Source: Mytilus trossulus (lineage: Eukaryota). Taken from it: 64,000 nucleotides of DNA. Under the pieces are notes generated by a model. The model was given only the letters and a program-made list of their open reading frames with translations. It made no database searches and was not told the DNA's origin. The stretch covers positions 96,100,001 through 96,164,000 of the forward strand of contig NC_086373.1 in assembly GCF_036588685.1 (NCBI RefSeq), written 5' to 3'. Made by a program: the position numbers and the translations under genes. Below, one piece after another: positions 9,201-29,779 of this stretch; position 1 is the first letter of the stretch, and each line of letters begins with the position of its first letter.

Positions 9201-12200
9201 ATTTTAAACAAATCATAAAGAATAAATCTTAATCGTACATTTATAAAGCAACACACTTTATTCACTAAACTCGTTAGTTAATTAAAGCTGTTTATATGTG
9301 AATAATGTACTGAAATAGCAAACTTGAATATAATTTTAGGTAACATCCAAGAAACTTTTTACTCTGGGGAGTTAACATATTAAGTGCTATTGATTGTTGC
9401 TTGAATAACATACAGTGGTAATCTTTTGTGAACTGTATGTAGAGGTTTACATGAGTTTATCCTTAGAAATATGTGTGTGAGCAAGGTTTGTCTATAATTT
9501 TACCAGATACTTTTTTATTGGTTAATCAGCAATACAGCAGTCATAGTTTTGAAAACAACCACCAGGACAAAATAAAACTTTTAAACCTTATATTAACACT
9601 TACCGTTCCTCCTCAGTTTCATCAAGAACCCAGGCGAAGGCAAATGATCCTTTGCCTAACTTCTTAGATTCCTGTTCATATTTATGCATGATTCGTTGGT
9701 TTATCTCCCCTAGCTGGTACAACAGATGACCCATTAGAGTACTCTTTCCAGCATCTACATGTCCTATATAACAACAAAGTGATTTAAAAACTATAATAAA
9801 ATTTATACATTATTCACTTTTTACATTATAGCATAAGCTTTCTTCAGAAAAAGTTCATAAGAAGAAAATACTTAACAGTAAAGCTGTATGTCTGTCAATT
9901 TCAAGATGGTAGAAAGCTAGGACACTTATAACAATAATTTCCTGCAGAATATATTTACCTATAACAACCATATTTAATTGATCCTTTTCTGCAAGTCTTT
10001 TGTCATATTCTTCCTTCATTTTTGCTGGATCTAATAACAACTTGGCTCTACAAGAAATTTTAATATTATTTTTTTCTTCAAAATGTAAATATTTTTCTCT
10101 TCAAATCATTAATGATAATAATTTCAAAATTTCTTTTATTATTTGATTACACTGATGTGGCATTTAGTGTTGATGTCTTGTGAATAGTTTTTCAATTCTA
10201 TATCTGAATGACTTTTAAGTTATGGGATGAAAATTACTTATCTAGGAACATGCCTTGTTGACCATAATCACAAATTGTTGAACTGTTTAGATGTTTGTGT
10301 GTACCTCAAACTTAGTCCTATGTACTTGGTTTGATTCAAAGATTTACATCTGGTATGGAGATATGCGTCAATGATTTCAGTAAAACGTTTTGAAGATGAT
10401 CAATGCTGAGTGATGAAAATAGCTCATATGTTGTTTTGTTTTTTTACATTAACAAGGCTGTTGATGATTTTTTAAATTGTTTCACATTTGCCATGTCACA
10501 GCTTTGTATAGCTTACCATACAGTATAGATTTTGCTCATTGTTGAATACTGAACAATGACCTATAAATGTTTACATCCAGGTCCTTTGGTCAGGTAGACA
10601 TTTTATTTTCATACCACATGTCTATATTTGTACACATCTGTTATATCTGACATAATTTGAACTTACTTAGAAGCACTCCTCGGAATAGCTCCAAGAGATG
10701 GGTCTTTTTTAGGGGTCAAGAAACTGTCAGTTTTAGACTCCACTTTTAGAGTATCCCCTTTAGAATCAGATTTCACTGTCAGTACACCACTATCTGTTTT
10801 TAAATCGTTTTTTCCTGTCCGTAAATTACTGTCTTCAGAATTACTAGCTGCTATCCTTCCTTTATCACTGTCAATATTTAGACTAGTTTTCACATTATTA
10901 GATAATGTTTGAGACTTTTGCAAAGATTCACTTTTATCTGAATTTAATTGACTGTTTGTGGCTTGATCACTACTGTTTAGTGTCTTTTCAGGACTTTTAG
11001 AAGATTGTCTCCCCTTCGGTGGTACTTTCAATATCACTGTTGGTGGGGCTGTGGCAAATGCTACAATGTCAGCAAATAAAACATTAATTCTGAAAGTAAA
11101 ATGTTAATGCAAGCTAAACCTAAGTAGAAACAGTTCATGAAAATATAATGAAGTCTAGTCATTTTTTACTATTTTTTAATGTTACTTGCAAAATATGGGA
11201 AAATGAAAGAAATATGATTTCAAAGTTACCTCTGGATACTGCGTTTTGATCATAAAGAAGCTTCTGTAAAATTTTCATAAAATTCTATGATGTTTGACAA
11301 ACTTATTGATGTGTAAAAAAAACTTTTAACTACAGTCTGAACCATCTTCGCTAGCCAAGGGTTACAATCCCCTCCCCTCCTCTCCACCCTAGGCAGATTG
11401 AGATGGAATTTCAGAGACACAAGGTAATGATTCTTATTGTTTGCAGTCATAACTGGATGCATCCAATCTAAAATCACCTATAACATGATCAAGTGTAAAT
11501 GTAAGTAAACAATTGCCACATGCTGATTGTGCAACAAGTCTGTACAGCAGAACACACACAGACAATATTAAGGTAGATCACAGGTATATATTTTTTGAGA
11601 CAGAATTTTTTGCCGAAAATTTGCCGAAATGAAGATTTTACTATGCTCTTTTCAAAAATTTAATGAAAAGTATGGTTCACCGTGCTATTTTTCAAGCAGT
11701 GAGTCGTTGAAAATTGCCAAAATTTGGTTAGTTTGTTCATGAAAAAACACATTAGTGTGCATAAAAAAAATTCTATGAGATAGAATTTTGAAATAAATTG
11801 TGAGAAGAAAGATTTCATAATATGTCTTAAGAAAATAAAAAGAAAGCATGGTGTCACCGAATTTGTTTTCCTGCTACAAGTAAAAATAAAAAAAATCCCT
11901 ATAAGTCCAGTGTAAATTTTGTACTAAAAGAGTTATCTCCCCTTAAATGGCTCATTTGAAAAAAATGATTTTCACACCAAAAAAAATGATATTTGTTAAA
12001 ATATTTTGTATAATACGATGAATTAACAAGTTATTTTCAAATAGAAAAAAACAGTCTTACTATTGAATTGCAAATATGTCTCTAAATTTGCTGATTTAGG
12101 CAAATAACTAGACCTATTTTGTACTGTGATTGTATAATCCAAGATGGCGATATACCATCAATCTACCTTAAGTGACAATTTAAATGTTTATTTAACTATT

Positions 12201-18200: not shown

Positions 18201-21200
18201 GCCCCACTCGCACGATCATTTTCTATGTTCAGTGGACCTTGAAATTGGGGTCAGAACTTTAATTTGACATTAAAATTAAAAAAGATCATATCATAAGGAA
18301 CATATATACTAAGTTTCAGGTTGATTGGACTTCAACTTCATCAAAAACTACCTCGACCAAAAACTTTAACCTGAAACTTGACAGACAAACGAACAGACAG
18401 ATGAACAGACGCACAGTCCAGAAAACATAATGCCCCTCTACTATTGTAGGTGGGGCATAAAAAATAAATCTTTTTCTTAAAATCAGTTTAAGCAAATTCC
18501 AAATCTCATAATATCAGTATGGCACACACAGAATGATTTTGTTATCAGCTTCTTTATTTATAGTACATGTGCCAGGTTCTTCCCTTTAAAACACATTCCA
18601 TTTCATTCTGTCTACCTCTACCATTCTATCTGTCTTGTCTCTATTTTCTCTGCTTCAACACAGGATATTCATTGTTTATCAACAGTTTTAGTACTTGGTG
18701 TTCTTTCTGGTAAAGCTGCCGTTTTAGTATTCTATCTACCTCTTTCTCATAATCATACAATAGCTGTTGTCTAATAATCATGTCTGCTTAAAAATGGATT
18801 TTGGATGTTCATTTTTTCTCACCAGTTCTAGTAAATGCTGCTTTCTGTTTAGATCTGACAATATCATCAGGTGACGGAGTAGTAAAATCAAATGGAATAA
18901 TCTCATTCATAATGTTACATGACCTTTTAATATTCTTCATTTGATGAGTATAAGAAAATTGACCGTATTTCCTTTTCTTATTTATCTTATAATTACAATC
19001 ATAAAGACATAAAACCTGTCCAAGAAATGAGGCCTGAAATTTCACAAAGTCACATTGAACAGTATTAATAGTCTCTTCAGAAAAGGTTGGAAGTAGCACT
19101 TCATGGTCATGACCTTCAACTGATTCTTGTGCAATAAATTGTTTCTTTTCTTTTTTAACAGTTTGAGAAACTTTTGGAACAGACTTGACAATTTTCTTCC
19201 CAGCCAAATCAGTCAGTGAAATATTGGACTCCTTTTTCAAATTAGATATCTTTAAACCATCTAAATTGTATACTAATTTATCTCCTTGACTAGGTTTAAC
19301 TTCATTAGATGATGTTTTTGACAAAGCTGCCAGTGATGTCATACTTTTCCCTGAGTTCTGACTATCGGTAGATTGTGTAGAGGAATTAACATGTGTTCCT
19401 GGTTGATCTGAAGACTGAGTTAAGCGTTTGCTAGGAAGTTGTTTTGATGGTAAAGCTAAATCTGACAATGATAATTGTTTAGCTGTATTATGTTTAACAT
19501 TGGCTAATTCTGCCAAAGATGGTTGTGTTGACGTTCTTGTAGACTGAGAACTAGCCAGTTCTGCCAAAGATGGTTGTTTTGAAACTCCTACAGACCTAGA
19601 ATTAGTCAGTTCTGCTAAAGAAGGTTGCCTTACTTGGATAGAAGAATCTTTAGCTATTTCTGCTAAGGAAAATTGCTTCCCTGTACCAGAAGGAAGTATT
19701 TTGGTCAAATCAGTTAACTTGCTTTTCAAGGTATCATGACCAATTTCAACACCAGATAATTTACTCTCCAATTCAGTCACCTGGTATTGGTTATCAGTTG
19801 TTTTATCTTTGTTCAAATTTGACACCCCTTTCTGACTGGCCAATGCAGACAAAGATGGCTGTTTGGAGGATGGTGTATTCTGACTGGTCAACTTAGACAC
19901 TGATGGCTGCTGTTTGGATGATGCATTCTGATTGGTCAGCTCTGATAATGAAAGCTTCTTTGATAAATTTAGTCCAGATAAATCAGATAATGATGGTTGC
20001 TTAGCAGATGTTCTCTGGTTGGCCAATTGAGATAAAGATGGTTGCTTTGAAGACAAGTTTTGAGTAGCCAGTTGAGATAAAGGTGTATTTTGCTTTGCAA
20101 AATGTGATAAGGACGACTGCTGACTACATGATGAGTTCTGTTTAGCTAACTCTGATAAAGATGGCTGCCCTTTGCACTTTACATTCTGACCTGTTAATTC
20201 TGATAATGGTATCTGCTTTCTAGAAGAAACATTTTGTTTAGCCAATTCAGACAATGACTTATCTTTTGTAGAAACTGCTGATTGGTTTGCAACATTTATC
20301 AGAGCAGGCTGTTTGGAAGATAATGAATTCTGATTGGCTAGCTCTATAACTGATGGTTCATCAGGTGTACATGACAAATAATCAGAAGATCCAGTGGATG
20401 GATACTTTTCTCTTTTTCTAATGCCTGATTCTTGACCATCAGGTGTTGTGGAAAGACATTCTGATGAACCGGCGGAGGAATAATTAATAATTTTAGCTTT
20501 TAATGCAGTATTTGATATATTTTCTAATGAACTCTCAGAAGACCAGCTACCGCCATATTTCAGTATCCCTAAGGACTGTTTTAAATTATGAGAGAAATTA
20601 ATTTTAGGGGAATTAGTATCAAGGGATTGTAAAAAGTCATCAAAATCATCATCATAATCTCCTTACCTTACAGATGCCAATTTTAATCCAATCACAATTG
20701 TTGTTATTAATATTTGTAATTGACCAATCAGATGTAGAGTTGTTTCAATGAATCACCATGCAGGAACAGGAAGAAATGAAAAAGAAAGAAAAGGCATGAT
20801 GTTAGGCAAGATATATAGTAGCTAAATTCTGCATTACATAAAATAAACTTTCTGTTCTATAACTTGTTACAGCTGTTCTATGTATGATTTTAATCACTAT
20901 TTTCTCAAACTTTCCTTCGATCTTTCTGTTTAATAATTTTCAGAATCGCACAACTTTACAGTTATGGTTTATACTCAGAAGTGTAGAAATAGTGTATAAA
21001 GTCATAAACCAACATAATTGACATTGCTTATTAAAATACAAATATAGCTATTGGTCTTTCAAACTTAAGGATTTTTCTCAGCTGCATCTCAGGGCTATTG
21101 CTCATTGATGATATTGCAACTTAAAAACTCCCTCTGGTTTAATCATCTATGATGATTGATATTTTACATCAATATTTGGCAAGTCATAAAATTATATTAT

Positions 21201-24200
21201 TCCTTTATCACTTAAAAAGTATATTTAAATTAAACTGTAGACTCAATATCAAAAAAAATTATAAACAACAATGTTTTCTTAAAAATGTTTTCTTTCAATT
21301 AGACCAAAATAACATCAATGTTTTATAAACATTCAAATGTGGAAGCTTTATTTACATAGTAAGTTCCAATTGTGTTGGAAAATTTGATGGTTTATTGGTT
21401 GATATCCACCTAGTGGCAATTATCTATATAGAATAAATAAATAGATGCAATGAATACCTTTGTCATGCTATTACAGCAGAATGCATCAGGTGTGTAGGAA
21501 AAGGTAATATCTTTAGTTAGCTTGCTTGCTAGCTGAATCATGAAGTCATTATAAGGTTAGGTAAACTACCTTCTTTTAAGAGTTAGCTAGTCCGTAGATT
21601 ACCAAGGCTTAAATTAAAATATCGTTTGTTTGCCCTTTACCGACCGACCCTTTAAATTCGTTCCGCCTGAAAATCTTTTATTTGCATTTTCCAGCAAGAT
21701 TTTATTTTATTTTATTTTTTCGTTCCTATCAAAAATCTTATATTTGAATTTGCCGCTCAAACCTTTTTACTGGAATCCTCGGGTTTTACATTTGTCGTAT
21801 AACGTCTAGTCCGTTTGGTATCACGTGAGCGTTTGACATGAACACTTGCATTTAGAGTTTCAAAGCATTTGTTTGAAATCGATATTGAACAGTACGTTAC
21901 TCTGTATCTTTATACTTGATGAGAAGGGTTCATTTACAAAACTATCAACGTGTGTACAAACTATTTTGTAAACGGACGTTGTATTCTATGTAGGGATGGC
22001 CTTTTCAAGGACGTATAACTAGCATACGTCCTTGGCCTTTTTGTGATCCGTAGATCAGGATGATTATGTTAACGATGCCTTCGACCAGTATTGCTATATT
22101 CATTATATCTGACATGAACCAAAGGTGACAAACGCCTTTAAAGTGGAGAGTATTTGGCAGTAAAATCGCCTAAGTTTTCCATACAGATCATTTTATAAAT
22201 GCGATGTAAAATATGTGACAATTGAGTTTCAACTTTCAAGTCTCATTGCATTTTAATTAGCAACATAGGCACAAACGAAAATTTAAACACTCTAGGGACT
22301 TTTTCTACTAGTAATGTATGTCTGCCTGGGCATATTTTACCAGGACAATATTAAACCTTATAGAAAACCTTTAGGTAGAGGTAAGCAAACAATGTACGTA
22401 GTACAGAATATTAGTGCAAGTTAAAACTCTTCAAAGTTCAAGGCATATAAACATTGAAAATATGCGACACAGCTCTATATTTTGATATTTGAAAACAAAA
22501 TAGTAGTGCATATGAATTAACTTCACATTCTACATGACATTTTTTTTTCAAAACTTCCTTGGACTATGATACAACTTGGAACAGTATATCTAACAATATG
22601 TATGTTCCTGGATACAAATAGTCCCACAAACTTTTTAGCAAAAGCAAAACAGACAAAATGACATTATGAAGATTTTTTATCTATAAAATAAAATATTATA
22701 CCTACCTGCCTACCAATGACAAAAAATATACCGACCCAAGTTATTTTTTTGGGGAAAAAATAAAATATTTTACCTTCCTACCTACCCTGTTTCAAAACAT
22801 AGGGTCGGAAAAGGGCAAACAAACAATATTTTAATTTAGGCCCAATACATGTATATCTGTAGAACTAGACTACTCAATAAGGAGAGTAGTAAACCTAACC
22901 TAATAATGACTTTACAGTTCAGCTAACAAGCAAGCTAACCAAAGATTATTCTTCGACCTATGCACTCATTGCATTCTGGTGTAAAGTCTTAAGCTGTATT
23001 ACCACAGTAATATTTGATCATAACTTTGGAGTATATTAGATGCATACCTTGTGATCTGTTCCTTCGTGAATCTCGAGGCTGTCTCTGTGGCTTTGGTGCA
23101 TCTAAAAAGGAAAACCATCTTGTTCAATCTTATTTGGGTGATTACAGATTGTACAATTGTATTTATTATAAGCTTGGCTGTTAGGTTTGGAATTTCAGTC
23201 AGTGCAGATTGAACATTGTATTTATTCAAGCTCAGCTCACTAGGTCTCGGAATTCATTTCGAACAGATTGAACATTGTATTTATCTATGTTCATTAGGTC
23301 TAAGAATTCATTCAGTGCAGATTGTAAATTGTATTTATCTAAGCTTGGCTGTTAGATTACATTGTACATGTTGTATTGATTTAAGTTAGGCTAATCGGTC
23401 TTGGAATTAATTCAGTGCATATATTCTATGTTGCATTTATTTAAGCTTGGCTGATATTTAATCTGGCTTATATGATTTCTAAATCCTTATAATGTCGGTT
23501 TAATGTTGATGTTATAACACTTGCATATGATGTTATACAAAAAATTAGTGGTGTCAGACTTTAATAAAATATTTTAGTTATTATCAGAGTAGATTTTATT
23601 ACACTTGTCTGTTTGATTCAGTTATTATTAGTGTAGATTTTATTTTGCAATTATTTAAGCTTGACTGATATTTAATCTGGCTTATTTGATTTCTAAACCC
23701 TTTTAATGTCGGTTTAATGTTGATGTTTTTACACTTGCTTGAATGATTTAGTAATTTTATCAGAGTAGATTTTATGTTGCAGTTATTCAATTTGCATGTT
23801 TGATTCAGTTATTATTAGTGTAGATTTTATGTTGCAGTTATTAAACTTGTCTGTTTGATTCAGTTATTATTAGTGTAGATTTTATGTTGCAGTTATTAAA
23901 CTTGCCTGTTTGATTTAGTAATTATCAGTGTAGATTTTATGTTGCAGTTATTCAACTTGCCTGTTTGATTCAGTTATTATTAGTGTAGATTTTATGTTGC
24001 AGTTATTAAACTTGCCTGTTTTATTAAGTAATTATCAGAGTAGATTTTATTAAACTTGCCTGTTCCTGTTTGGTTAAGTAATTCGTTCAGCGTAGATTGT
24101 ATGTTGTAGTTATGTTTGACAATGGTTTGAGCCATTATATGTTCAGGACAGGATTCTCCCAAGACATTTCTAACTTCATCCAGGCAAGAATTCAACTTGG

Positions 24201-26968
24201 CTAAAAAACAAATAAATATGATTAAAAAAAAGATTTCAGAATCATTTTTTGATGAGAGCATCTTGACAATTATGATTAAAAATTTACTATGATAATAGGG
24301 ATATCAAATGAATGCATGATAATTTTATCGTGTCAGTCATTTTTCTAATATATTTTACACAAATACATGAATTATTTTTATATTAGTAGATAAAGCTGGG
24401 TGTTTTAGGAATTCTAATGATGCCATTATCTGGCACCCAAGTCAGAAGACTCTTCTGAAATCTCAGCATCACCTTTTTTTTCAATGATCAAGGACTTTTT
24501 TTTATACCAAATTTCACACCTACACCTTACCTTGGTCTGTTTCATTTAACTGTAACCTAGGTGTTCCTGCAGAATGATTGAGAATTGTATCCTCATCACT
24601 CTCTCCTTCATCCTCTTCAGGAATATTCTCTTCCACATAAGATGACAAGTTAACATTTCTTTCTCCTCTATTGAAAGTGAACTGTGCAGCTGTAAATATA
24701 ACAACTTCTTGTTTATAATTAAATGTATAAGCTAACACATGAAACCTAATCAAGGAAATGCCTAAGAATTTCTATTAACCCTTACCATGTTGGGGCTGTT
24801 ATCTTATGGATGAACCCAGAATACCATTATTTTAGCTCCAATTGCTCTCCATACCTTTTGGCGGTCAACTTTATTAGTATGACATTTATTTCGTAGTGTA
24901 TATATATGTTATCTCAATCTGAAACCATTTAAAGTCATGATTCTCAGTTTTAATGTTCATTTTGAGCTAAAAATACGGACATTGAAAATTGAAATCTGAT
25001 AAAACTGGGTGTTTTCTTTAGGTGCGGACTTCCCTTCGATGTCTAACACACGAAGTTCAGAGGCCTAAAACTTCAACAAACAGTGTTAACCCACAGGCAT
25101 ATAACAACTGCTCTTGTTTATTATTGAAATATGCCTAGGAAACAACTACTTCCAGGTGCAGGTTAACATGGTCCAGTTCAAGTAAAAATTCAGAAAAAGT
25201 TTTGAATTTTTTGTCAAAATTACCTTCTTTAGACACGTTAGATTTTATTGAATCAGTTTTACTACTTGGTTTTAAATTTCAGGTGGCATCATATGGTAGA
25301 TGTACCACTATGGATTACCATAAAATGCAAAATCAATTCAATTGTACATGTATTTGATTTTTTTAAACTAAAACTGCACAAGTTCGTGGTTGTTTACAGT
25401 TTCATCCTACATTGAACCTTACCTTCGAAAGAGATACATGTATACATTAAATGTCCTCATGACTATAATATTACCTGTCCCTGGGGAGATACAATAGTTA
25501 TCCTCTACTGAATGGCCAAGGTAATCATCATCTTCCAAAAAATCTGAAGAAAAAACAATAACAAATTTGTTTGATTGGTATTTATGGTATTTTTATTTCA
25601 TGTTAATGTTAACTAATTAGAAAACCAGGCCAAAAACCTAGATAAAATGTACATAGTAAGATTCAACGTATCAAAACCCCATATATATTTAATTTTATTG
25701 AAAACAAACAAAGTTGTTTGGTCATTACTGTGGATCACTTTGAAAATGGGGTTGAAGTTTTTAAATCTTCATACACGGTCAGATTTAGCATTACATTGAA
25801 TTAAACCCCATTAAAATTGGTCAAGAAATATGCAATTAATACAAAGAAATAGAAGGATATTGTTATAGGATTCTTTTTCCTAGCAACTCCCTAAAACTAT
25901 TCCAACCTTCTTTTTTATATGTGGAACCTTGTGGTACATTTTCAAAGTGATCTATAGACTTATACTCAATTATTGTCTGACAATAAGGAACTCCTTGTAT
26001 AATTGTTCATAACTCCTGTCATAACTGCTAAAAAAAACATTCTTTTTAAGCTATGGACCCTTTTGGTATAATTTCACAGAAATACATTCACTTTTATATT
26101 CACAAGTTATTGTCCTGAAGTGAAACTACAAAAACGATTGGGTGTGGGCCCTTATGGTCCCCAATTCTTAAACAGGTGGGACAATAATGGCCTGGCACAA
26201 TCAAACCAAAACTTTCATTTGTGGTATGACCCCTGTGGCTGTGGTATAATTTCATTGAGATACATACACTTTTATTCAATTATATGTCTCGAAACGACAT
26301 TATATGAATGTAAAAAAAAACTGATACAAACGTAGACATGATAGGACTCAAAATACATCTCATGATGTTGGAGTGGCATGTATATATACATTGAATAGTG
26401 TGCTTTAATGTTTGTGATTTTTATTTTTATTTCATTTACTTGGTTGATTTGTAAAAAAACACCCATAGCCTTTTAGATCTTCTAAACTGTTGTGCATTGT
26501 TCCTCTAACATATGACGTAAATTTGCTTTGTCAATCTAGACTGGTTCTACACTGGACAAAATGGTTTTGCCAAAATATAAAGATTACTAACATTACACAT
26601 AGGTAAACTTGCTTTTTCTGCTAGCTCTCCATTGTAAATAAAAGTAAGATTAGGTTGTTTGAAAGTGGGGCAAGTTGGTAAAATAATGGGGTGATTTTGG
26701 CAACAAACCAAGCATGTTCTTAATTTTTAACAGGTCTGATGAAAAAAAACCGGACAAGCTTCAAAATCCAAGAAAATAATGGTCACTAAATTAAATAACT
26801 GCTTTATATCGAATAAACTACCGTACTACGTTTTTAAATTATTTCCCCCCAAATTTTTTAAATCATACAGTAAGAGAGGGTTTAATACTAGATTCATTTT
26901 TTAAGTTAGATGAATTTCGTTATACCTTCTTCATAGTTCATAGATCTGACATTCCTGTGTCGTGACAT
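3277..26968 (-). CDS. HBS1L: HBS1-like translational GTPase (Pelota/Dom34 partner), long isoform, about 747 aa, 17 coding exons
   Basis: Phase-consistent exons: 26968-26926 ([14 protein letters not shown]), 25543-25475 ([19 protein letters not shown]), 24689-24531, 24200-24060 ([15 protein letters not shown] donor), 23101-23048, 11060-10667, 10047-9959, 9763-9604 ([10 protein letters not shown]1), 9166-9054 (RGVTMD; DAPGH, G3), 8409-8293, 7779-7546 (NKMD, G4), 7221-7048, 6469-6374, 5968-5865, 5194-5094, 3913-3769 ([16 protein letters not shown]), 3327-3277 (stop TAA, followed by AATAAA). Sum 2244 nt. The N-terminus is typical of HBS1L rather than eRF3 or eEF1A. Confidence 0.96.
4236..4405 (+). 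repeat. Dispersed repeat family A (further copies at about 17400, 38675, 53700, 55055, 62120-62410 reverse, 63627-63937)
   Basis: Shared aaactcatcatagataccagga...gccagacgcgcgtttcgtctacaaaagactcatcagtgacgct. Confidence 0.85.
8601..8863. mobile_element. MITE with TTAA flanks (Kolobok-like)
   Basis: ttaaggtggtacccaacact ... agtgttaggtaccaccttaa. Confidence 0.75.
11568..12171. mobile_element. MITE with TTAA flanks (Kolobok-like)
   Basis: ttaaggtagatcacaggtat ... ataccatcaatctaccttaa. Confidence 0.65.
13356..15175. mobile_element. Helentron/HINE-like element with internal tandem repeats
   Basis: Subterminal inverted repeats tatacgaccgca / tgcggtcgtata, a (gac)n microsatellite near one end, and internal tandem units (tttggaccc..., aaaactcccaaaatcaat...). 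The element is inserted in an (aat)n tract. Confidence 0.7.
16745..16950. mobile_element. MITE
   Basis: Inverted ends gggtctcattgggg / ccccaatgagaccc with caacata on both flanks. Confidence 0.6.
18171..18462 (-). mobile_element. Short HINE-like element
   Basis: aaaacaagaatgtgtcc...gccccact ... (acag)n ... gtggggcataaaaa; same architecture as the other HINE-like elements, in opposite orientation. Confidence 0.55.
18809..20661 (-). CDS. HBS1L: Alternative terminal exon of HBS1L encoding a SKI7-like (HBS1L-V3/HBS1L3) short isoform lacking the GTPase domain; full isoform about 772 aa
   Basis: The frame of the 522-aa ORF is open upstream to 20662. Phase-1 acceptors AAG|GAG| (exon start 20661 or 20658) match the phase of exon 5. 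The C-terminus [10 protein letters not shown]...QFSY..Q...[25 protein letters not shown] matches the conserved end of metazoan HBS1L short isoforms. Candidate AATAAA at 18553-18558. Confidence 0.9.
20667..20822 (-). promoter_or_regulatory. Distant branch point, polypyrimidine tract and AG-exclusion zone upstream of the SKI7-like exon
   Basis: Minus strand CCTAAC (20806-20801) is followed by CCTTTTCTTTCTTTTTCATTTCTTCCTGTTCC. No AG dinucleotide occurs from about 20821 to 20669. Confidence 0.6.
21606..22842. mobile_element. Non-autonomous TIR element (about 40-bp TIRs, 3-bp caa flanks; Harbinger-like)
   Basis: ggcttaaattaaaatatcgtttgtttgccctttaccgacc ... ggtcggaaaagggcaaacaaacaatattttaatttaggcc. 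Confidence 0.8.
23120..24059. repeat. 55-bp tandem array (plus older degenerate copies) derived from the 3' end and donor site of HBS1L exon 4
   Basis: Unit cttgcctgtttgattcagttattattagtgtagattttatgttgcagttattaaa starts at 23791, 23846, 23901, 23956 and 24011. Degenerate copies extend down to about 23120. Confidence 0.9.
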
Positions 26969-27815
26969 TGTGATCTCTCTTCGTTTATTTGTCTATTTTT
27001 CGTGTATCAAACATGTATTTTGACAGAAGCATATTGCCACATAAAGACGAAATGAACGACCTTGACCTAAAAGGCCTAGCTTTACTTGATATATTTTATT
27101 TTACCTTTTCCGATACAAAAAAAGTGGGACCAAAAAATAAATCAACAAATCAAAATAATTTCAAGATAAATTCTACGACATATTCTCAAAATTTTGAATA
27201 TAAAAACAAAAAAGTTCGAAATTTTTATCAGAAAGACTAAATTAAAGGTGTGTAAATCCGAACTAGACACCCAGATCGGTAAAAATAAAATCAAACATTT
27301 TAACCATGATTTCAATAATATAAAACCCCCAATTAAAATTATATATATTTGTTTCATTATATACACAACAATGCACTCTGACGCTTTATTTGAATAACAA
27401 TAAAAAAAATCTCTCAGAATACCAATTTTCGGTATTTGTACAGATCTGAGCTTAAAATATTGCGGGAAACGTGCTAAAGGAAAGTAGATGCAACGTACTC
27501 TGTTTACTGGTATAAAGGTGATCAAATATATTTCATGTTTATTTAACCAATTGACTTACCAATCAGATAAAAAAAAAAAAGGGAAGTTAAGGCAAAATTA
27601 ATATGATGAACAGTAATAATATTTGTAATTTCATGATAATTTTTCAATTTATATATATATGTAATATTATTATCTTTGCTGTCTATGTAAAGTCATTCTA
27701 GTTTGCAGTTCATTTTTTGACTCTCCAATAGTTATCAAAGGTAGGTACATAGAATTCCTCACAATTTGAACCTGAGACTACTATAACACATAGTAGTCTC
27801 AGTTTGAACATATAA

Positions 27816-29779
27816 GGGTACAAGTCAAATCGGCACCTGTTCAAATCGGCACCCATAGAAAAAGTCAAATCGGCACCTGGTTAATGCAGGGTTCACACAT
27901 TGCCGATTATTGCTCCCGTTTGAGATCAGACAGCAATACGATATGAAAAGTGAAAAAGTCGGATTGGTATCCTCAATTATCTGGAATGTCCTATCATTGT
28001 CTGAATGCATTCGTTTTAGTTCGTAACAGATTCCTACGGATGGGGAAGGGTCCGAATAGTTCGGCAAAGCATCCCGACAGTTAGGTGCGTCCCGTAACAT
28101 TCGGGGCAACTCAGCCGATTTTGTCTAATCGGATTACAATCGTGGCTATGTCGTGACAGATTCTGCTGTATCGGATCGAATTCCGAACAATGTCTTGTGT
28201 ATTCTGGACGGTGTCCTGTGGAACGGGAATGATCCGGAGTAATTTTTCGTAGCTGTTTTCCTGCTGATTGAGTCCAGATTTCATCCAGATCTTGTCGATT
28301 GCGAACGTTTTTTTGCCGAAACCATTCCGAAACAGTCCTGTTATTAATACGAAATTCGTCAATGGAACCCACGTCAGAGTCCCGACAACTACAGAATACA
28401 ATACGACTGAGACCAGACAAAGCCGTTTGCAATGAGATAGAGCGGAACGTAATAGGATTACGTTCCGACAGTACCTGATTATCCCGAATATGCCGACAGT
28501 TTTCGAACAAATAACTTCCGTCAGCGTCGGTTCACTGTCTGGTCACTGTCTGATCTCAATCGGATTACATTCGGTAGAGTCGGGACGCAGTCGTGACAGA
28601 CTCGGTCGAATTTTACCTGGCGAAAAATAGAAATCTGAGTAAAAGCGGATCCAGAACGGGATTATCGGCACTTATTCGCTTAGAAATGGTTGAATATCGG
28701 TGCTTCCTGAACACTATCTGATTGTTGTCGTGATCAAATGTTTTTTTTTTAAATTCTAATTTAAGTTTGAATTTCCATCCACGATTCACAGGATCTTGAT
28801 CAGACTTTTAATAAATTTTAATCGGGAATGGTCCTGTCAAGAATAGTCTCATTGGCACTCACACCACATCTTCCTATATCTAGTAAAAATCGTGAATGTG
28901 TGACCCCAGCTTAAATCGGCACCTGTTCAAATCGGCACTCAGTATAGTCAAATCGGCATCCAAAAATATTTGATATTATATATGTATAAATAATTTTAAA
29001 ATATATAAATTCATGATCTATTTTGGGGTTTGGATTTAATTATGCATAACATCACTAAAAAGCATCAAGCAGTTAGAAAACATAGGTTAATTATTTAAAG
29101 TTTTCCCAACATTCTATGACTGATGTTTTGATAAGTTTTCTTTTCAATTAATGTTAATAACTTTAATGAAGTACATAGTTAATATGTTTGTGGTTTTAAC
29201 TCAACAGTAGAATGTTAAAGGTATTTATTAATGTTTTATTCTTCAAAAACTTCATAAGAAACAAAGAAGCCCTTACACAATCTAATGTTTAACAATGAGA
29301 CAATTAGAAGCATAATTAAAAAAAGTGGAAAATTATGAGTCCCTTTCAATAATTCAAACTTTCATGCAAAATAATTAGCAATTCAAGGTGTTTTTCAGTA
29401 GAGTTTAAATAGCATTAAACCAACAATGTTGCAAAATGTTCAACTGTTAAAAAGTGCATAAAAAATATCCAGTACCGTACCTCATATATCATTGCAAGGA
29501 TTTGTATAGTGAAAATATAGTACAAATCCTTGATCATTGTATATATATATAACTAATACGCCTTAGATAAGAGAAAAATAACCCCTTCCTTATTTTTACT
29601 GTTTTTGCTGAAATTACTGTTAAAATATGTATATAAAACAAATCTAACATGGGTGCCGAATTGACTATATAAAGTGCCGATTTAACCAGGTGCCAATTTG
29701 ACTAGGTGCCGATTTGACTATACTGAGTGCCGATTTGACCGGGTGCCGATTTAACCAGGTGCCGATTTGACTAGAATTC
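27816..29779. mobile_element. Non-autonomous Mutator-like/foldback element with 9-bp TSD
   Basis: TSD aacatataa at 27807-27815 and 29780-29788. Inverted ends built of repeated gtcaaatcggcacc / ggtgccgatttgac motifs. The superfamily is inferred from TSD length. Confidence 0.8.
27885..28911. mobile_element. PIF/Harbinger-like non-autonomous element nested in the left arm of the foldback element
   Basis: Imperfect TIRs tgcagggttcacacattgccgatt / aatcgtgaatgtgtgaccccagct with TAA on both sides. Removing it restores the host motif ctggttaaatcggc. Confidence 0.75.

What the first reader, a model, noticed from the sequence alone, without database searches (positions are those of the whole stretch)
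18809..20661. Hidden SKI7-like exosome-adaptor isoform encoded by a giant alternative last exon of HBS1L
Seen: a 1.85-kb uninterrupted frame lies inside HBS1L intron 5, is phase-compatible with exon 5, and has its own stop and candidate poly(A) signal. It ends in SFLGQVLC...[23 protein letters not shown]. Established: many eukaryotes produce both Hbs1 (ribosome rescue) and Ski7 (SKI complex-exosome bridge) from one gene by alternative splicing, and the human short isoform ends in a similar PFDF..SPDDIV motif. Inference: this locus does the same in a probable mollusc. The ORF would easily be mis-annotated as a separate low-complexity hypothetical gene.
Basis: partly seen in the sequence, partly recalled or inferred. 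Interest (0 to 1): 0.85.

Follow-up and report, generated by a model that had tools for sequence, protein, structure and literature searches.

The report
Mussel HBS1L SKI7-like alternative last exon
The long open frame is real and is the alternative last exon that turns the mussel ribosome-rescue gene HBS1L into a SKI7-like adaptor for the RNA-degrading exosome, but this arrangement is already published for animals, molluscs included, and RefSeq already models this protein.

Summary
Observation confirmed. On the minus strand, 20662..18812 is a 617-codon open frame. The next longest frame in the window has 165 codons, and the longest in 200 shuffles had 190. It lies in the 12-kb intron between HBS1L exon 5 (23101-23048) and canonical exon 6 (from 11060). 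The genome is Mytilus trossulus.

RefSeq already holds this product: XP_063408361.1 and XP_063408360.1, 772 aa, named only "uncharacterized protein LOC134691824". Only one GT-AG junction (23048 to 20661, phase 1) reproduces that protein.

The last 65 residues match human HBS1L isoform 2 (SKI7, PDB 9g8m chain E) at E 5.6e-7. A family profile matches it at E 2e-25, covering both the SKI-binding and the exosome-binding regions. The first 440 codons of the exon hold no ATG, so an independent nested gene is very unlikely.

Brunkard & Baker (2018) already listed the Aplysia and scallop orthologues as SKI7-like. RefSeq shows the same isoform pair in more than ten mollusc species.

Two side leads remain untested. 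The roughly 15-20 SL(S/A)ELA repeats match the human SKI3-docking helix. An in-phase donor-like site sits four codons before the stop.

The parts
26926..26968 (-). HBS1L exon 1, coding part (ATG at 26968-26966), shared by both isoforms
   Evidence: tblastn of P0001 and P0016; donor AAG|gtataa
25475..25543 (-). HBS1L exon 2 (shared)
24526..24689 (-). HBS1L exon 3 (shared; boundary as in RefSeq isoform X2. X1 differs at residue 91, at the exon 3/4 junction)
24060..24195 (-). HBS1L exon 4 (shared; carries most of the HBS1_N domain PF08938); followed by a GC-AG intron (CAG|gcaagt)
23048..23101 (-). HBS1L exon 5, the last shared exon; donor AAG|gtatgc, phase 1. This is the branch point between the two isoforms
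18809..20661 (-). SKI7-like alternative terminal exon, coding part (616 codons plus a split Gly codon, stop TGA 18811-18809); acceptor AG at 20663-20662, tandem alternative AG at 20660-20659
20360..20661 (-). Acidic, Ser-rich module at the start of the exon (P0001 residues 156-256). It is 72-74% identical in distant mytilids where the repeats are only about 40%. Role unknown
19193..20359 (-). Array of 15 strict plus about 5 degenerate (P/L)SL(S/A)(E/D)LA motifs, mostly 14-17 aa apart (P0001 257-645). It is the counterpart of the human SKI7 SKI-binding region 372-546. The motif equals the human SKI3-docking helix LSLSELI (L454, I458)
   Evidence: PMC11540850
18998..19054 (-). SKI7-like motif region (P0001 692-710, ...[15 protein letters not shown]), aligned with human patch 1 helix 555-572 (RRP43-MTR3 cleft). 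In Mytilus, human R559 is replaced by Q, P560 by A and F563 by L
   Evidence: PMC11540850, PMC5389692
18935..18976 (-). [14 protein letters not shown], aligned with human patch 2 loop 582-593 (FSY..Q is nearly invariant in the family)
18872..18916 (-). Patch 4-like motif [10 protein letters not shown], aligned with human 602-616 (CSL4 contact)
18824..18871 (-). [16 protein letters not shown], aligned with the human terminal helix 617-632 (SKI2 RecA1 contact). AlphaFold2 predicts a helix here with pLDDT about 95
18817..18823 (-). Donor-like site CTG|gtgaga, 4 codons before the stop, in the phase that would continue into exon 6. Its use is not shown
18553..18558 (-). AATAAA candidate poly(A) signal, about 250 nt after the stop
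10666..11060 (-). Canonical HBS1L exon 6 (acceptor ...cattgtag|CAT, phase 1). It is followed by 11 further tblastn matches down to 3280 that encode the translational GTPase
   Evidence: precomputed Pfam domains of P0016

Best explanation
The frame is the alternative last exon of the Mytilus trossulus HBS1L gene.

Transcripts that splice exon 5 (donor at 23048) to the weak acceptor at 20661 and are polyadenylated after the AATAAA at 18558 encode a 772-aa protein. That protein keeps the shared N-terminal HBS1_N region and lacks the GTPase. It is the orthologue of human HBS1L isoform 2 (HBS1LV3/HBS1L3, called SKI7). Transcripts that skip this exon and splice 23048 to 11060 encode the canonical ribosome-rescue GTPase.

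By homology with the human protein, the C-terminal 80 residues wrap the outside of the exosome core, then contact the CSL4 cap protein, and end in a helix that touches the SKI2 helicase. The central SL(S/A)ELA repeat region docks on SKI3. The protein would therefore bridge the SKI helicase complex and the cytoplasmic exosome during co-translational 3'-5' mRNA decay.

Shown here: the open frame, the gene anatomy, the unique compatible splice junction, sequence homology to human SKI7 over both functional regions, and conservation across molluscs. Inferred: use of the junction and poly(A) site in M. trossulus RNA, and the binding activities.
For: Open frame of 617 codons against at most 190 in shuffles.

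P0001 (XP_063408361.1, 772 aa, carries PF08938) is 100% identical to the exon and maps to five upstream exons plus this exon. A single GT-AG solution exists, 23048->20661, phase 1.

Canonical exons lie downstream at 11060-3280. They match a 747-aa protein (P0016) whose longest contig is only 2,433 nt, which means a spliced mRNA from a close relative.

PDB search: the only significant hit of the C-terminal 143 aa is 9g8m_E, 'Isoform 2 of HBS1-like protein', E 5.6e-7. A profile of 31 family members hits it at E 2.1e-25 over chain residues 8-268, and hits canonical Hbs1l only over the shared N-terminus.

84 representative clusters match the C-terminal piece, almost all at their extreme C-terminus, in proteins of 350-790 aa.

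The isoform pair 'HBS1-like protein X1' plus 'uncharacterized protein X2' (PF08938 only) appears in Ylistrum, Mizuhopecten, Saccostrea, Mya, Ruditapes, Ostrea, Dreissena, Mercenaria, Haliotis and Aplysia. All the short forms end in the PFDF..SPDDIV motif.

The exon has no in-frame ATG before P0001 residue 596. The exon occurs once in the genome. The terminal helix is predicted with pLDDT about 95. The EXO-like region is 57-62% identical in distant mytilids, against 17-40% for the linker and repeats. The genome also encodes the RRP41 and RRP46 exosome subunits and a Ski2_N exon. Functional map of the human protein: PMC11540850 and PMC5389692.
Against: The junction therefore rests on RefSeq models, not on reads I inspected.

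The acceptor is poor: pyrimidine fraction 0.40 and longest run 3, the weakest in the gene.

The strict human exosome-binding motif RxxxFxxxL is not kept in Mytilus (Q for R559, A for P560, L for F563). In humans that helix is the main determinant of binding.

The match of the repeat region to the human SKI-binding region is not significant with the single sequence. It is carried by a low-complexity motif.

No M. trossulus canonical protein with the N-terminal domain came back from the database.
Confidence: 0.88

Rival explanations
1. The exon is also, or mainly, an internal cassette. The donor-like CTG|gtgaga at 18823|18822 would be spliced to exon 6, giving a protein of about 1,360 aa with SKI7 motifs plus the GTPase, as in fungi, plants and some lophotrochozoans. 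The short form would then arise when polyadenylation beats that donor (a composite terminal exon).
For: The exon holds only two GTRAG sites. This one sits 4 codons before the stop and is in the phase (1839 nt = 613 codons) that continues into phase-1 exon 6. Family conservation ends at the G of ...AFTRTG, and the tails after it vary in length and sequence. Lineus longissimus RefSeq isoform X2 (P0074, 1,312 aa) and a Lingula protein (P0096, 1,239 aa) carry the SKI7 motifs followed by the GTPase. A 1,111-aa Lingula protein is also in the 2018 SKI7 alignment.
Against: A search sized to admit proteins of 433-1,379 aa found no Mytilus protein that combines the exon with a GTPase. Among 84 representatives the motif is almost always C-terminal. 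The G is not conserved in heterobranch gastropods, Patella, Dreissena or human. One in-phase GTRAG could be chance.
Confidence: 0.12
2. It is an independent gene nested in HBS1L intron 5, with its own promoter and start codon, as the M. edulis and M. galloprovincialis community annotations suggest.
For: P0006 (567 aa, 'unnamed protein product') and P0004 (667 aa, 'Hypothetical predicted protein') are modelled without a proper HBS1_N domain. Logan ORFs from other mytilids start at an internal Met (P0008-P0012).
Against: In M. trossulus the first in-frame ATG of the exon is at P0001 residue 596, which is 440 codons into a frame that is conserved throughout. The frame opens exactly at an AG in the phase of exon 5. 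RefSeq models in 3 Mytilus species and more than ten other molluscs join it to the HBS1_N exons. P0098 (643 aa, HBS1_N plus the PFDF-type end) sits on a 3.1-kb contig, most simply a spliced mRNA. P0004 and P0006 themselves contain pieces of the N-terminal exons.
Confidence: 0.03
3. It is a chance or decaying open frame in low-complexity repeat DNA and has no function.
For: The product is rich in Ser, Leu, Lys and Gln (46% of residues) and has no Pfam domain. DNA-level tandem repeats lie inside it.
Against: Its length is far beyond the shuffles. The frame is kept open in Mytilus species at 81-91% identity and in distant mytilids at about 40%. The C-terminus matches a solved human protein.
Confidence: 0.02

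Closest known systems
Human HBS1L isoform 2 (HBS1LV3 / HBS1L3 / SKI7; UniProt isoform as in PDB 9g8m chain E; PMC5389692, PMC11540850)
   Same: It is made from the HBS1L gene by splicing the last shared N-terminal exon to a large alternative terminal exon that lies in the next intron. It shares the N-terminal domain and has no GTPase. It ends with a SKI7-like motif, FSY..Q, PFDF..SPDDIV and a terminal helix, at the same spacing (about 50 residues). The middle part holds SL.EL motifs, one of which is the human SKI3-docking helix.
   Different: Mytilus shares five coding exons rather than four. The protein is longer (772 aa against 632). Mytilus has 15-20 regular copies of the SL(S/A)ELA motif, where the human has a few degenerate ones. 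R559, P560 and F563 of the human RxxxFxxxL helix are Q, A and L. Five extra residues (TGEKK) follow the ...AFTR that ends the terminal helix, where human has a single final E.
Mollusc SKI7-like proteins listed by Brunkard & Baker 2018 (PMC6143672, Supplementary Data Sheet 3: Aplysia XP_005104902.1, Mizuhopecten XP_021367803.1)
   Same: They are direct orthologues with the same architecture and the same C-terminal motifs. They are the same proteins as P0083 and P0024 recovered here.
   Different: They come from different species. Mytilus was not in that list. The mytilid SKI7-like motif has Ala where most molluscs have Pro.
Yeast Ski7 (PDB 5jea chain K) and fungal or plant SKI7/HBS1 alternative splicing (PMC3597508, PMC6143672)
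   Same: They share the functional logic: one ancestral gene gives a ribosome-rescue factor and a SKI-exosome bridge, and the Patch 4 motif is shared.
   Different: Fungal and plant SKI7 forms keep a GTPase-like domain and arise through cassette exons or alternative splice sites, not an alternative last exon. Sequence similarity to yeast Ski7 is not significant here (profile E 0.15).

Membership tests
Metazoan SKI7-like short isoform of HBS1L (HBS1LV3/HBS1L3) | Encoded by the HBS1L locus and shares the N-terminal exons (HBS1_N) with the canonical GTPase isoform | tested here: met
   P0001 maps to exons 1-5 plus this exon, and P0016 maps to exons 1-5 plus exons 6 onward. PF08938 matches at E 2e-14. 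The phase-1 junction is unique. This is met at the gene-model level; reads were not inspected.
Metazoan SKI7-like short isoform of HBS1L (HBS1LV3/HBS1L3) | Large alternative terminal exon with its own stop and poly(A) signal; no GTPase domain | tested here: met
   Stop at 18811-18809 and AATAAA at 18558-18553. The exon product has no Pfam domain.
Metazoan SKI7-like short isoform of HBS1L (HBS1LV3/HBS1L3) | Patch 4-like motif, metazoan consensus IaPF[D/R]F[K/D][S/T]aSPDDIV+A (PFDFxxxSPDDIVKxNQ in human) | tested here: met
   [19 protein letters not shown] at P0001 743-761. It aligns with human 607-625.
Metazoan SKI7-like short isoform of HBS1L (HBS1LV3/HBS1L3) | SKI7-like motif (human RxxxFxxxL, R559/F563/L567; metazoan consensus A+PShFAahL) | tested here: inconclusive
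   Mytilus has [12 protein letters not shown] aligned with human ARPSAFASTLCL. S561, L567 and the CL after it are kept. R559 is Q, P560 is A and F563 is L, with an adjacent F. Other mytilids keep R or K at 559. A helix is predicted here at moderate pLDDT.
Metazoan SKI7-like short isoform of HBS1L (HBS1LV3/HBS1L3) | SKI-complex-binding region N-terminal to the exosome-binding region (human 372-546, SKI3-docking helix 451-464 with L454 and I458) | tested here: inconclusive
   The profile aligns family columns 401-646 with chain residues 8-268 at E 2.1e-25. The hexamer LSLSEL occurs both in the human helix and in Mytilus. The single-sequence match of this low-complexity region is not significant.
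Metazoan SKI7-like short isoform of HBS1L (HBS1LV3/HBS1L3) | The spliced mRNA is expressed | not testable with these tools
Metazoan SKI7-like short isoform of HBS1L (HBS1LV3/HBS1L3) | Binds the exosome core and the SKI2-SKI3-SKI8 complex | not testable with these tools
   The contact subunits (RRP43, MTR3, CSL4, SKI3) could not be obtained as whole proteins. Only RRP41-like and RRP46-like single open frames were found, and PF10447 gave no match. No complex prediction was run.
Yeast-type Ski7 (GTPase-like domain retained) | C-terminal translational-GTPase-like domain in the same polypeptide | tested here: not met
   The frame stops at 18809, and no GTPase domain is present in P0001. The profile against 5jea_K scores E 0.15.
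Canonical Hbs1/HBS1L ribosome-rescue GTPase | GTP_EFTU domain plus domains II and III | tested here: not met
   These domains are encoded by the other isoform's exons at 11060-3280 (Pfam domains of P0016), not by this exon.

The most novel reading that the evidence does not exclude
The mussel SKI7 exon may be a composite exon. A latent 5' splice site that is conserved in bivalves (CTG|gtgaga at 18823), four codons before the stop, would compete with the intronic poly(A) site. The same 613-codon exon could then also be included as a cassette, giving a third, ancestral-type SKI7-plus-GTPase protein like those modelled in a nemertean and a brachiopod. In that case the 15-20 SL(S/A)ELA motifs would act as a multivalent SKI3-docking array.
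Probability: 0.12. Interest if true: 0.45.

Novelty: new member of a known kind. Interest (0 to 1): 0.2.

Why it matters
It gives a functional name (SKI7-like exosome adaptor) to a RefSeq protein labelled 'uncharacterized' in Mytilus and many other molluscs. It also explains why community annotations of this locus are broken. Beyond that it adds little, because the HBS1/SKI7 dual-product gene is established from fungi to humans and had already been noted in molluscs.

Two features could help people who study the SKI-exosome bridge. First, mytilids carry natural substitutions at the human exosome-binding residues R559, P560 and F563. Second, the unusually regular array of motifs identical to the human SKI3-docking helix offers a natural test of whether SKI3 docking is multivalent.

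Tried and rejected
- **Pfam on the exon product:** no family matched.
- **Bacterial-type promoter and terminator scan of the intron upstream of the exon:** 16 sites against 13.5 expected. It is uninformative for a eukaryote.
- **Complex prediction with exosome subunits:** not run. The subunits that contact SKI7 (RRP43, MTR3, CSL4) are not available as whole proteins. The own-genome search gave only an RRP41-like exon and an intronless RRP46-like ORF, and PF10447 found nothing. Swiss-Prot references are offered only for prokaryotes and phages.
- **Search for a Mytilus SKI7-plus-GTPase fusion protein:** none found among proteins of 433-1,379 aa.
- **Fold search of the 143-aa model:** not run. 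With pTM 0.26 for a peptide that folds on binding, matches would be meaningless.
- **Spliced model:** I built no joined sequence from the window and sent none to a search. Exons were handled one by one by reference, and the whole-protein comparisons used the database protein P0001.
Full report
**1. The observation**

On the minus strand the frame is open from 20662 to 18812 and stops with TGA at 18811-18809, which makes 617 codons. This is far more than chance allows in a window with 32% G+C. The next longest stop-to-stop frame in all six frames of the 64 kb has 165 codons. In 200 shuffles the longest frame averaged 122 codons and never exceeded 190.

The frame is closed upstream by TAA at 20665-20663, which overlaps the acceptor AG at 20663-20662. 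The exon therefore starts at 20661 in phase 1. Together they form a NAGNAG tandem acceptor that would add or drop one glycine.

AATAAA lies at 18558-18553, about 250 nt after the stop, and is the only canonical signal within 540 nt.

**2. What surrounds it**

The exon product is 100% identical to residues 156-772 of a database protein, P0001. This is XP_063408361.1, [quoted passage not shown], 772 aa, with the HBS1_N domain PF08938. The window is therefore Mytilus trossulus.

P0001 maps to five upstream exons: 26968-26926, 25543-25475, 24689-24526, 24195-24060 and 23101-23048. I checked each junction codon by codon. For the last junction only one GT-AG pair reproduces the protein: AAG|gtatgc with last base 23048, joined to ...ctgtaaggtaag|GAG with first base 20661, phase 1.

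A canonical 747-aa HBS1L (P0016) has all the EF-Tu-type domains, and its longest contig is only 2,433 nt, so it is a spliced mRNA from a close relative. It maps to the same five exons and then to exon 6 at 11060, followed by 11 further matches down to 3280.

The exon occurs once in the 1.3-Gb genome.

I built no joined spliced sequence from the window and searched none. Exons were treated one by one, by reference.

**3. What the product is**

The last 143 residues have one significant match among all solved structures: 9g8m chain E, "Isoform 2 of HBS1-like protein", at E 5.6e-7. This is the human SKI7 construct (residues 369-632) in the exosome-ribosome supercomplex (PMC11540850).

A profile of 31 family members matches that chain at E 2.1e-25 over chain residues 8-268. 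That range covers both the SKI-binding and the exosome-binding regions. The same profile matches canonical Hbs1l (5lzw) only over the shared N-terminus, at E 3.6e-37.

From the position of PFDF, chain index equals human residue minus 364. With that offset the Mytilus residues line up as follows:

| Mytilus residues (P0001) | Sequence | Human counterpart |
|---|---|---|
| 692-710 | ...[15 protein letters not shown] | patch 1 helix 555-572, in the RRP43-MTR3 cleft |
| 718-731 | [14 protein letters not shown] | patch 2 loop 582-593 |
| 738-752 | [15 protein letters not shown] | patch 3, 602-616, on CSL4 |
| 753-768 | [16 protein letters not shown] | terminal helix 617-632, which touches SKI2 RecA1 |

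AlphaFold2 with the family alignment predicts helices at the first and last of these. The terminal helix has pLDDT about 95. The model as a whole is not globular (pTM 0.26), as expected for a peptide that folds on its partner.

The middle of the exon holds 15 strict and about 5 looser copies of (P/L)SL(S/A)(E/D)LA, mostly 14-17 residues apart. The family consensus shows the same SLAxLAxxH motif repeated. In the human chain, L454 and I458 are the two residues shown by mutagenesis to dock SKI7 on SKI3 (PMC11540850). They lie in NLSLSELIAETI, and the SKI-binding fragment begins with PSLTELFQEH. The Mytilus repeat is therefore the same short motif as the human SKI3-docking helix. This reading is at the level of the motif only. 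The single-sequence alignment of this low-complexity region is not significant.

**4. Is it translated from exon 1?**

The exon has no in-frame ATG until P0001 residue 596, which is 440 codons in. Yet the whole frame is conserved. Identity to M. galloprovincialis and M. californianus is 81-99% by region. In distant mytilids it is 72-74% for the first 100 residues, about 40% for the repeats and 57-62% for the exosome-binding-like end. A transcript starting inside the intron could not translate that frame.

RefSeq gives the same pair of products in Ylistrum, Mizuhopecten, Saccostrea, Mya, Ruditapes, Ostrea, Dreissena, Mercenaria, Haliotis and Aplysia: "HBS1-like protein" with the GTPase, and an "uncharacterized protein" with PF08938 only. 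All the short forms end in the PFDF..SPDDIV motif.

Among 84 representative clusters that match the C-terminal piece, the match is almost always at the very end of a protein of 350-790 aa.

**5. Mechanism**

*Shown:* one gene with two mutually exclusive 3' ends after exon 5.

*Inferred from the human and yeast work* (PMC5389692, PMC4942675, PMC11540850): the short product bridges the SKI2-SKI3-SKI8 helicase complex, through its repeat region, and the cytoplasmic exosome, through its C-terminal 80 residues. The long product rescues stalled ribosomes with Pelota.

The genome encodes the partners that I could look for: RRP41 and RRP46 orthologues and a Ski2_N exon.

The SKI7-exon acceptor has the poorest pyrimidine tract of the gene (0.40, longest run 3, against 0.65 for exon 6). 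This fits a minor or regulated isoform, but no ratio was measured.

**6. Where it departs from the human protein**

- The human RxxxFxxxL helix is necessary and sufficient for exosome binding in cells (PMC5389692). It is only partly kept in Mytilus: Q for R559, A for P560, L for F563, with S561 and L567 kept. Other mytilids keep R or K at 559, and most molluscs keep the proline.
- The repeats are far more numerous and regular than in the human protein.
- An acidic, Ser-rich module at the start of the exon is the best conserved part among mytilids and has no known role.

**7. A side lead**

Only two GTRAG sites occur in the exon. One, CTG|gtgaga at 18823|18822, lies four codons before the stop. 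It is in the phase (1839 nt, 613 codons) that would read on into exon 6.

Conservation in the family ends at that glycine, and the tails after it vary. A nemertean RefSeq model (P0074, 1,312 aa) and a Lingula protein (P0096, 1,239 aa) carry the SKI7 motifs followed by the GTPase. Against this, a search sized to admit such a fusion found none in Mytilus. I rate use of this donor in Mytilus at about 12%.

**8. Novelty**

The dual HBS1/SKI7 gene is established in fungi (PMC3597508), humans (PMC5389692), plants (PMC6143672) and zebrafish (PMC7924785). PMC6143672 states that SKI7-like orthologues were found in mollusks. Its supplement lists Aplysia XP_005104902.1 and Mizuhopecten XP_021367803.1, which are the very proteins I recovered as P0083 and P0024.

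RefSeq already models the M. trossulus isoform. X1 and X2 are both the short form and differ at one residue. What is added here is a functional name for an "uncharacterized" protein and a residue-level map onto the 2024 human structure. The finding is correct but ordinary.

**9. Earlier notes of this scan**

Other notes on this window concern the repeat motif (s1-826926) and the acceptor design (s1-827065). I measured both in passing and my results agree with what those notes observed.

Noticed in passing
window 18817-18823 (minus strand): Donor-like CTG|gtgaga four codons before the stop of the SKI7-like exon, in the phase that would continue into canonical exon 6. It is one of only two GTRAG sites in the exon. 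Family conservation ends at the Gly codon that contains the GT.
   Followed up: partly
P0074 (Lineus longissimus isoform X2, 1,312 aa), P0096 (1,239 aa, near-identical to Lingula anatina P0095), P0086 (Haliotis rubra, low quality): Protein models that carry the SKI7 motifs (SPDDIV at 720, 534 and 638) followed by the GTPase domain. The canonical Lingula model P0095 even begins its post-N-terminal part inside the Patch 4 motif (…FR|DDIVKEKQKGAF…). This suggests an alternative acceptor rather than an alternative last exon in brachiopods.
   Followed up: partly
window 24058-24060 (minus strand): Intron 4 of HBS1L has a GC donor (CAG|gcaagt), which makes it a GC-AG intron.
   Followed up: no
window 20659-20663 (minus strand): NAGNAG tandem acceptor (aAG|GAG|) at the start of the SKI7-like exon. 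Using the second AG would delete Gly156. The acceptor has the weakest pyrimidine tract of the gene.
   Followed up: partly
window 20360-20661 (minus strand; P0001 residues 156-256): Acidic, Ser-rich module (DYDDDFDDF…[11 protein letters not shown]…[15 protein letters not shown]…[11 protein letters not shown]). It is 72-74% identical in distant mytilids, better kept than the repeats or even the exosome-binding-like end. No known function.
   Followed up: no
window 24195/24526 junction; P0001 against P0180: RefSeq isoforms X1 and X2 of LOC134691824 are both the short SKI7-like form and differ only at residue 91 (Ala or Gly), at the exon 3/4 junction. No M. trossulus canonical HBS1L carrying the N-terminal domain came back from the protein database, so RefSeq may model the GTPase part separately.
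   Followed up: partly
window 23176-23226 (minus strand): A weak extra match (53% identity) of P0017 residues 120-136, the end of exon 4, lies inside intron 4. It sits within the stretch another reader noted as an intronic array of exon-end copies (s1-827388).
   Followed up: no
P0004, P0006, P0007 (M. galloprovincialis and M. edulis community annotations): Broken models of this locus. Parts of the N-terminal exons are fused to parts of the SKI7-like exon, with internal pieces skipped and, in P0006 and P0007, wrong C-termini.
   Followed up: partly
L003:1219-1890 (-) = G000 contig 7; L002:1414-2157 (+) = G000 contig 14: An apparently intronless 223-aa ORF is orthologous to exosome subunit RRP46/EXOSC5 (E 7e-65 to human). 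A single large exon covers residues 31-240 of RRP41/EXOSC4 (E 3e-94).
   Followed up: partly
window 27142-28542 (minus strand): Three open frames of 137-165 codons lie just upstream of HBS1L exon 1. They are the longest in the window after the SKI7-like exon. Not examined.
   Followed up: no
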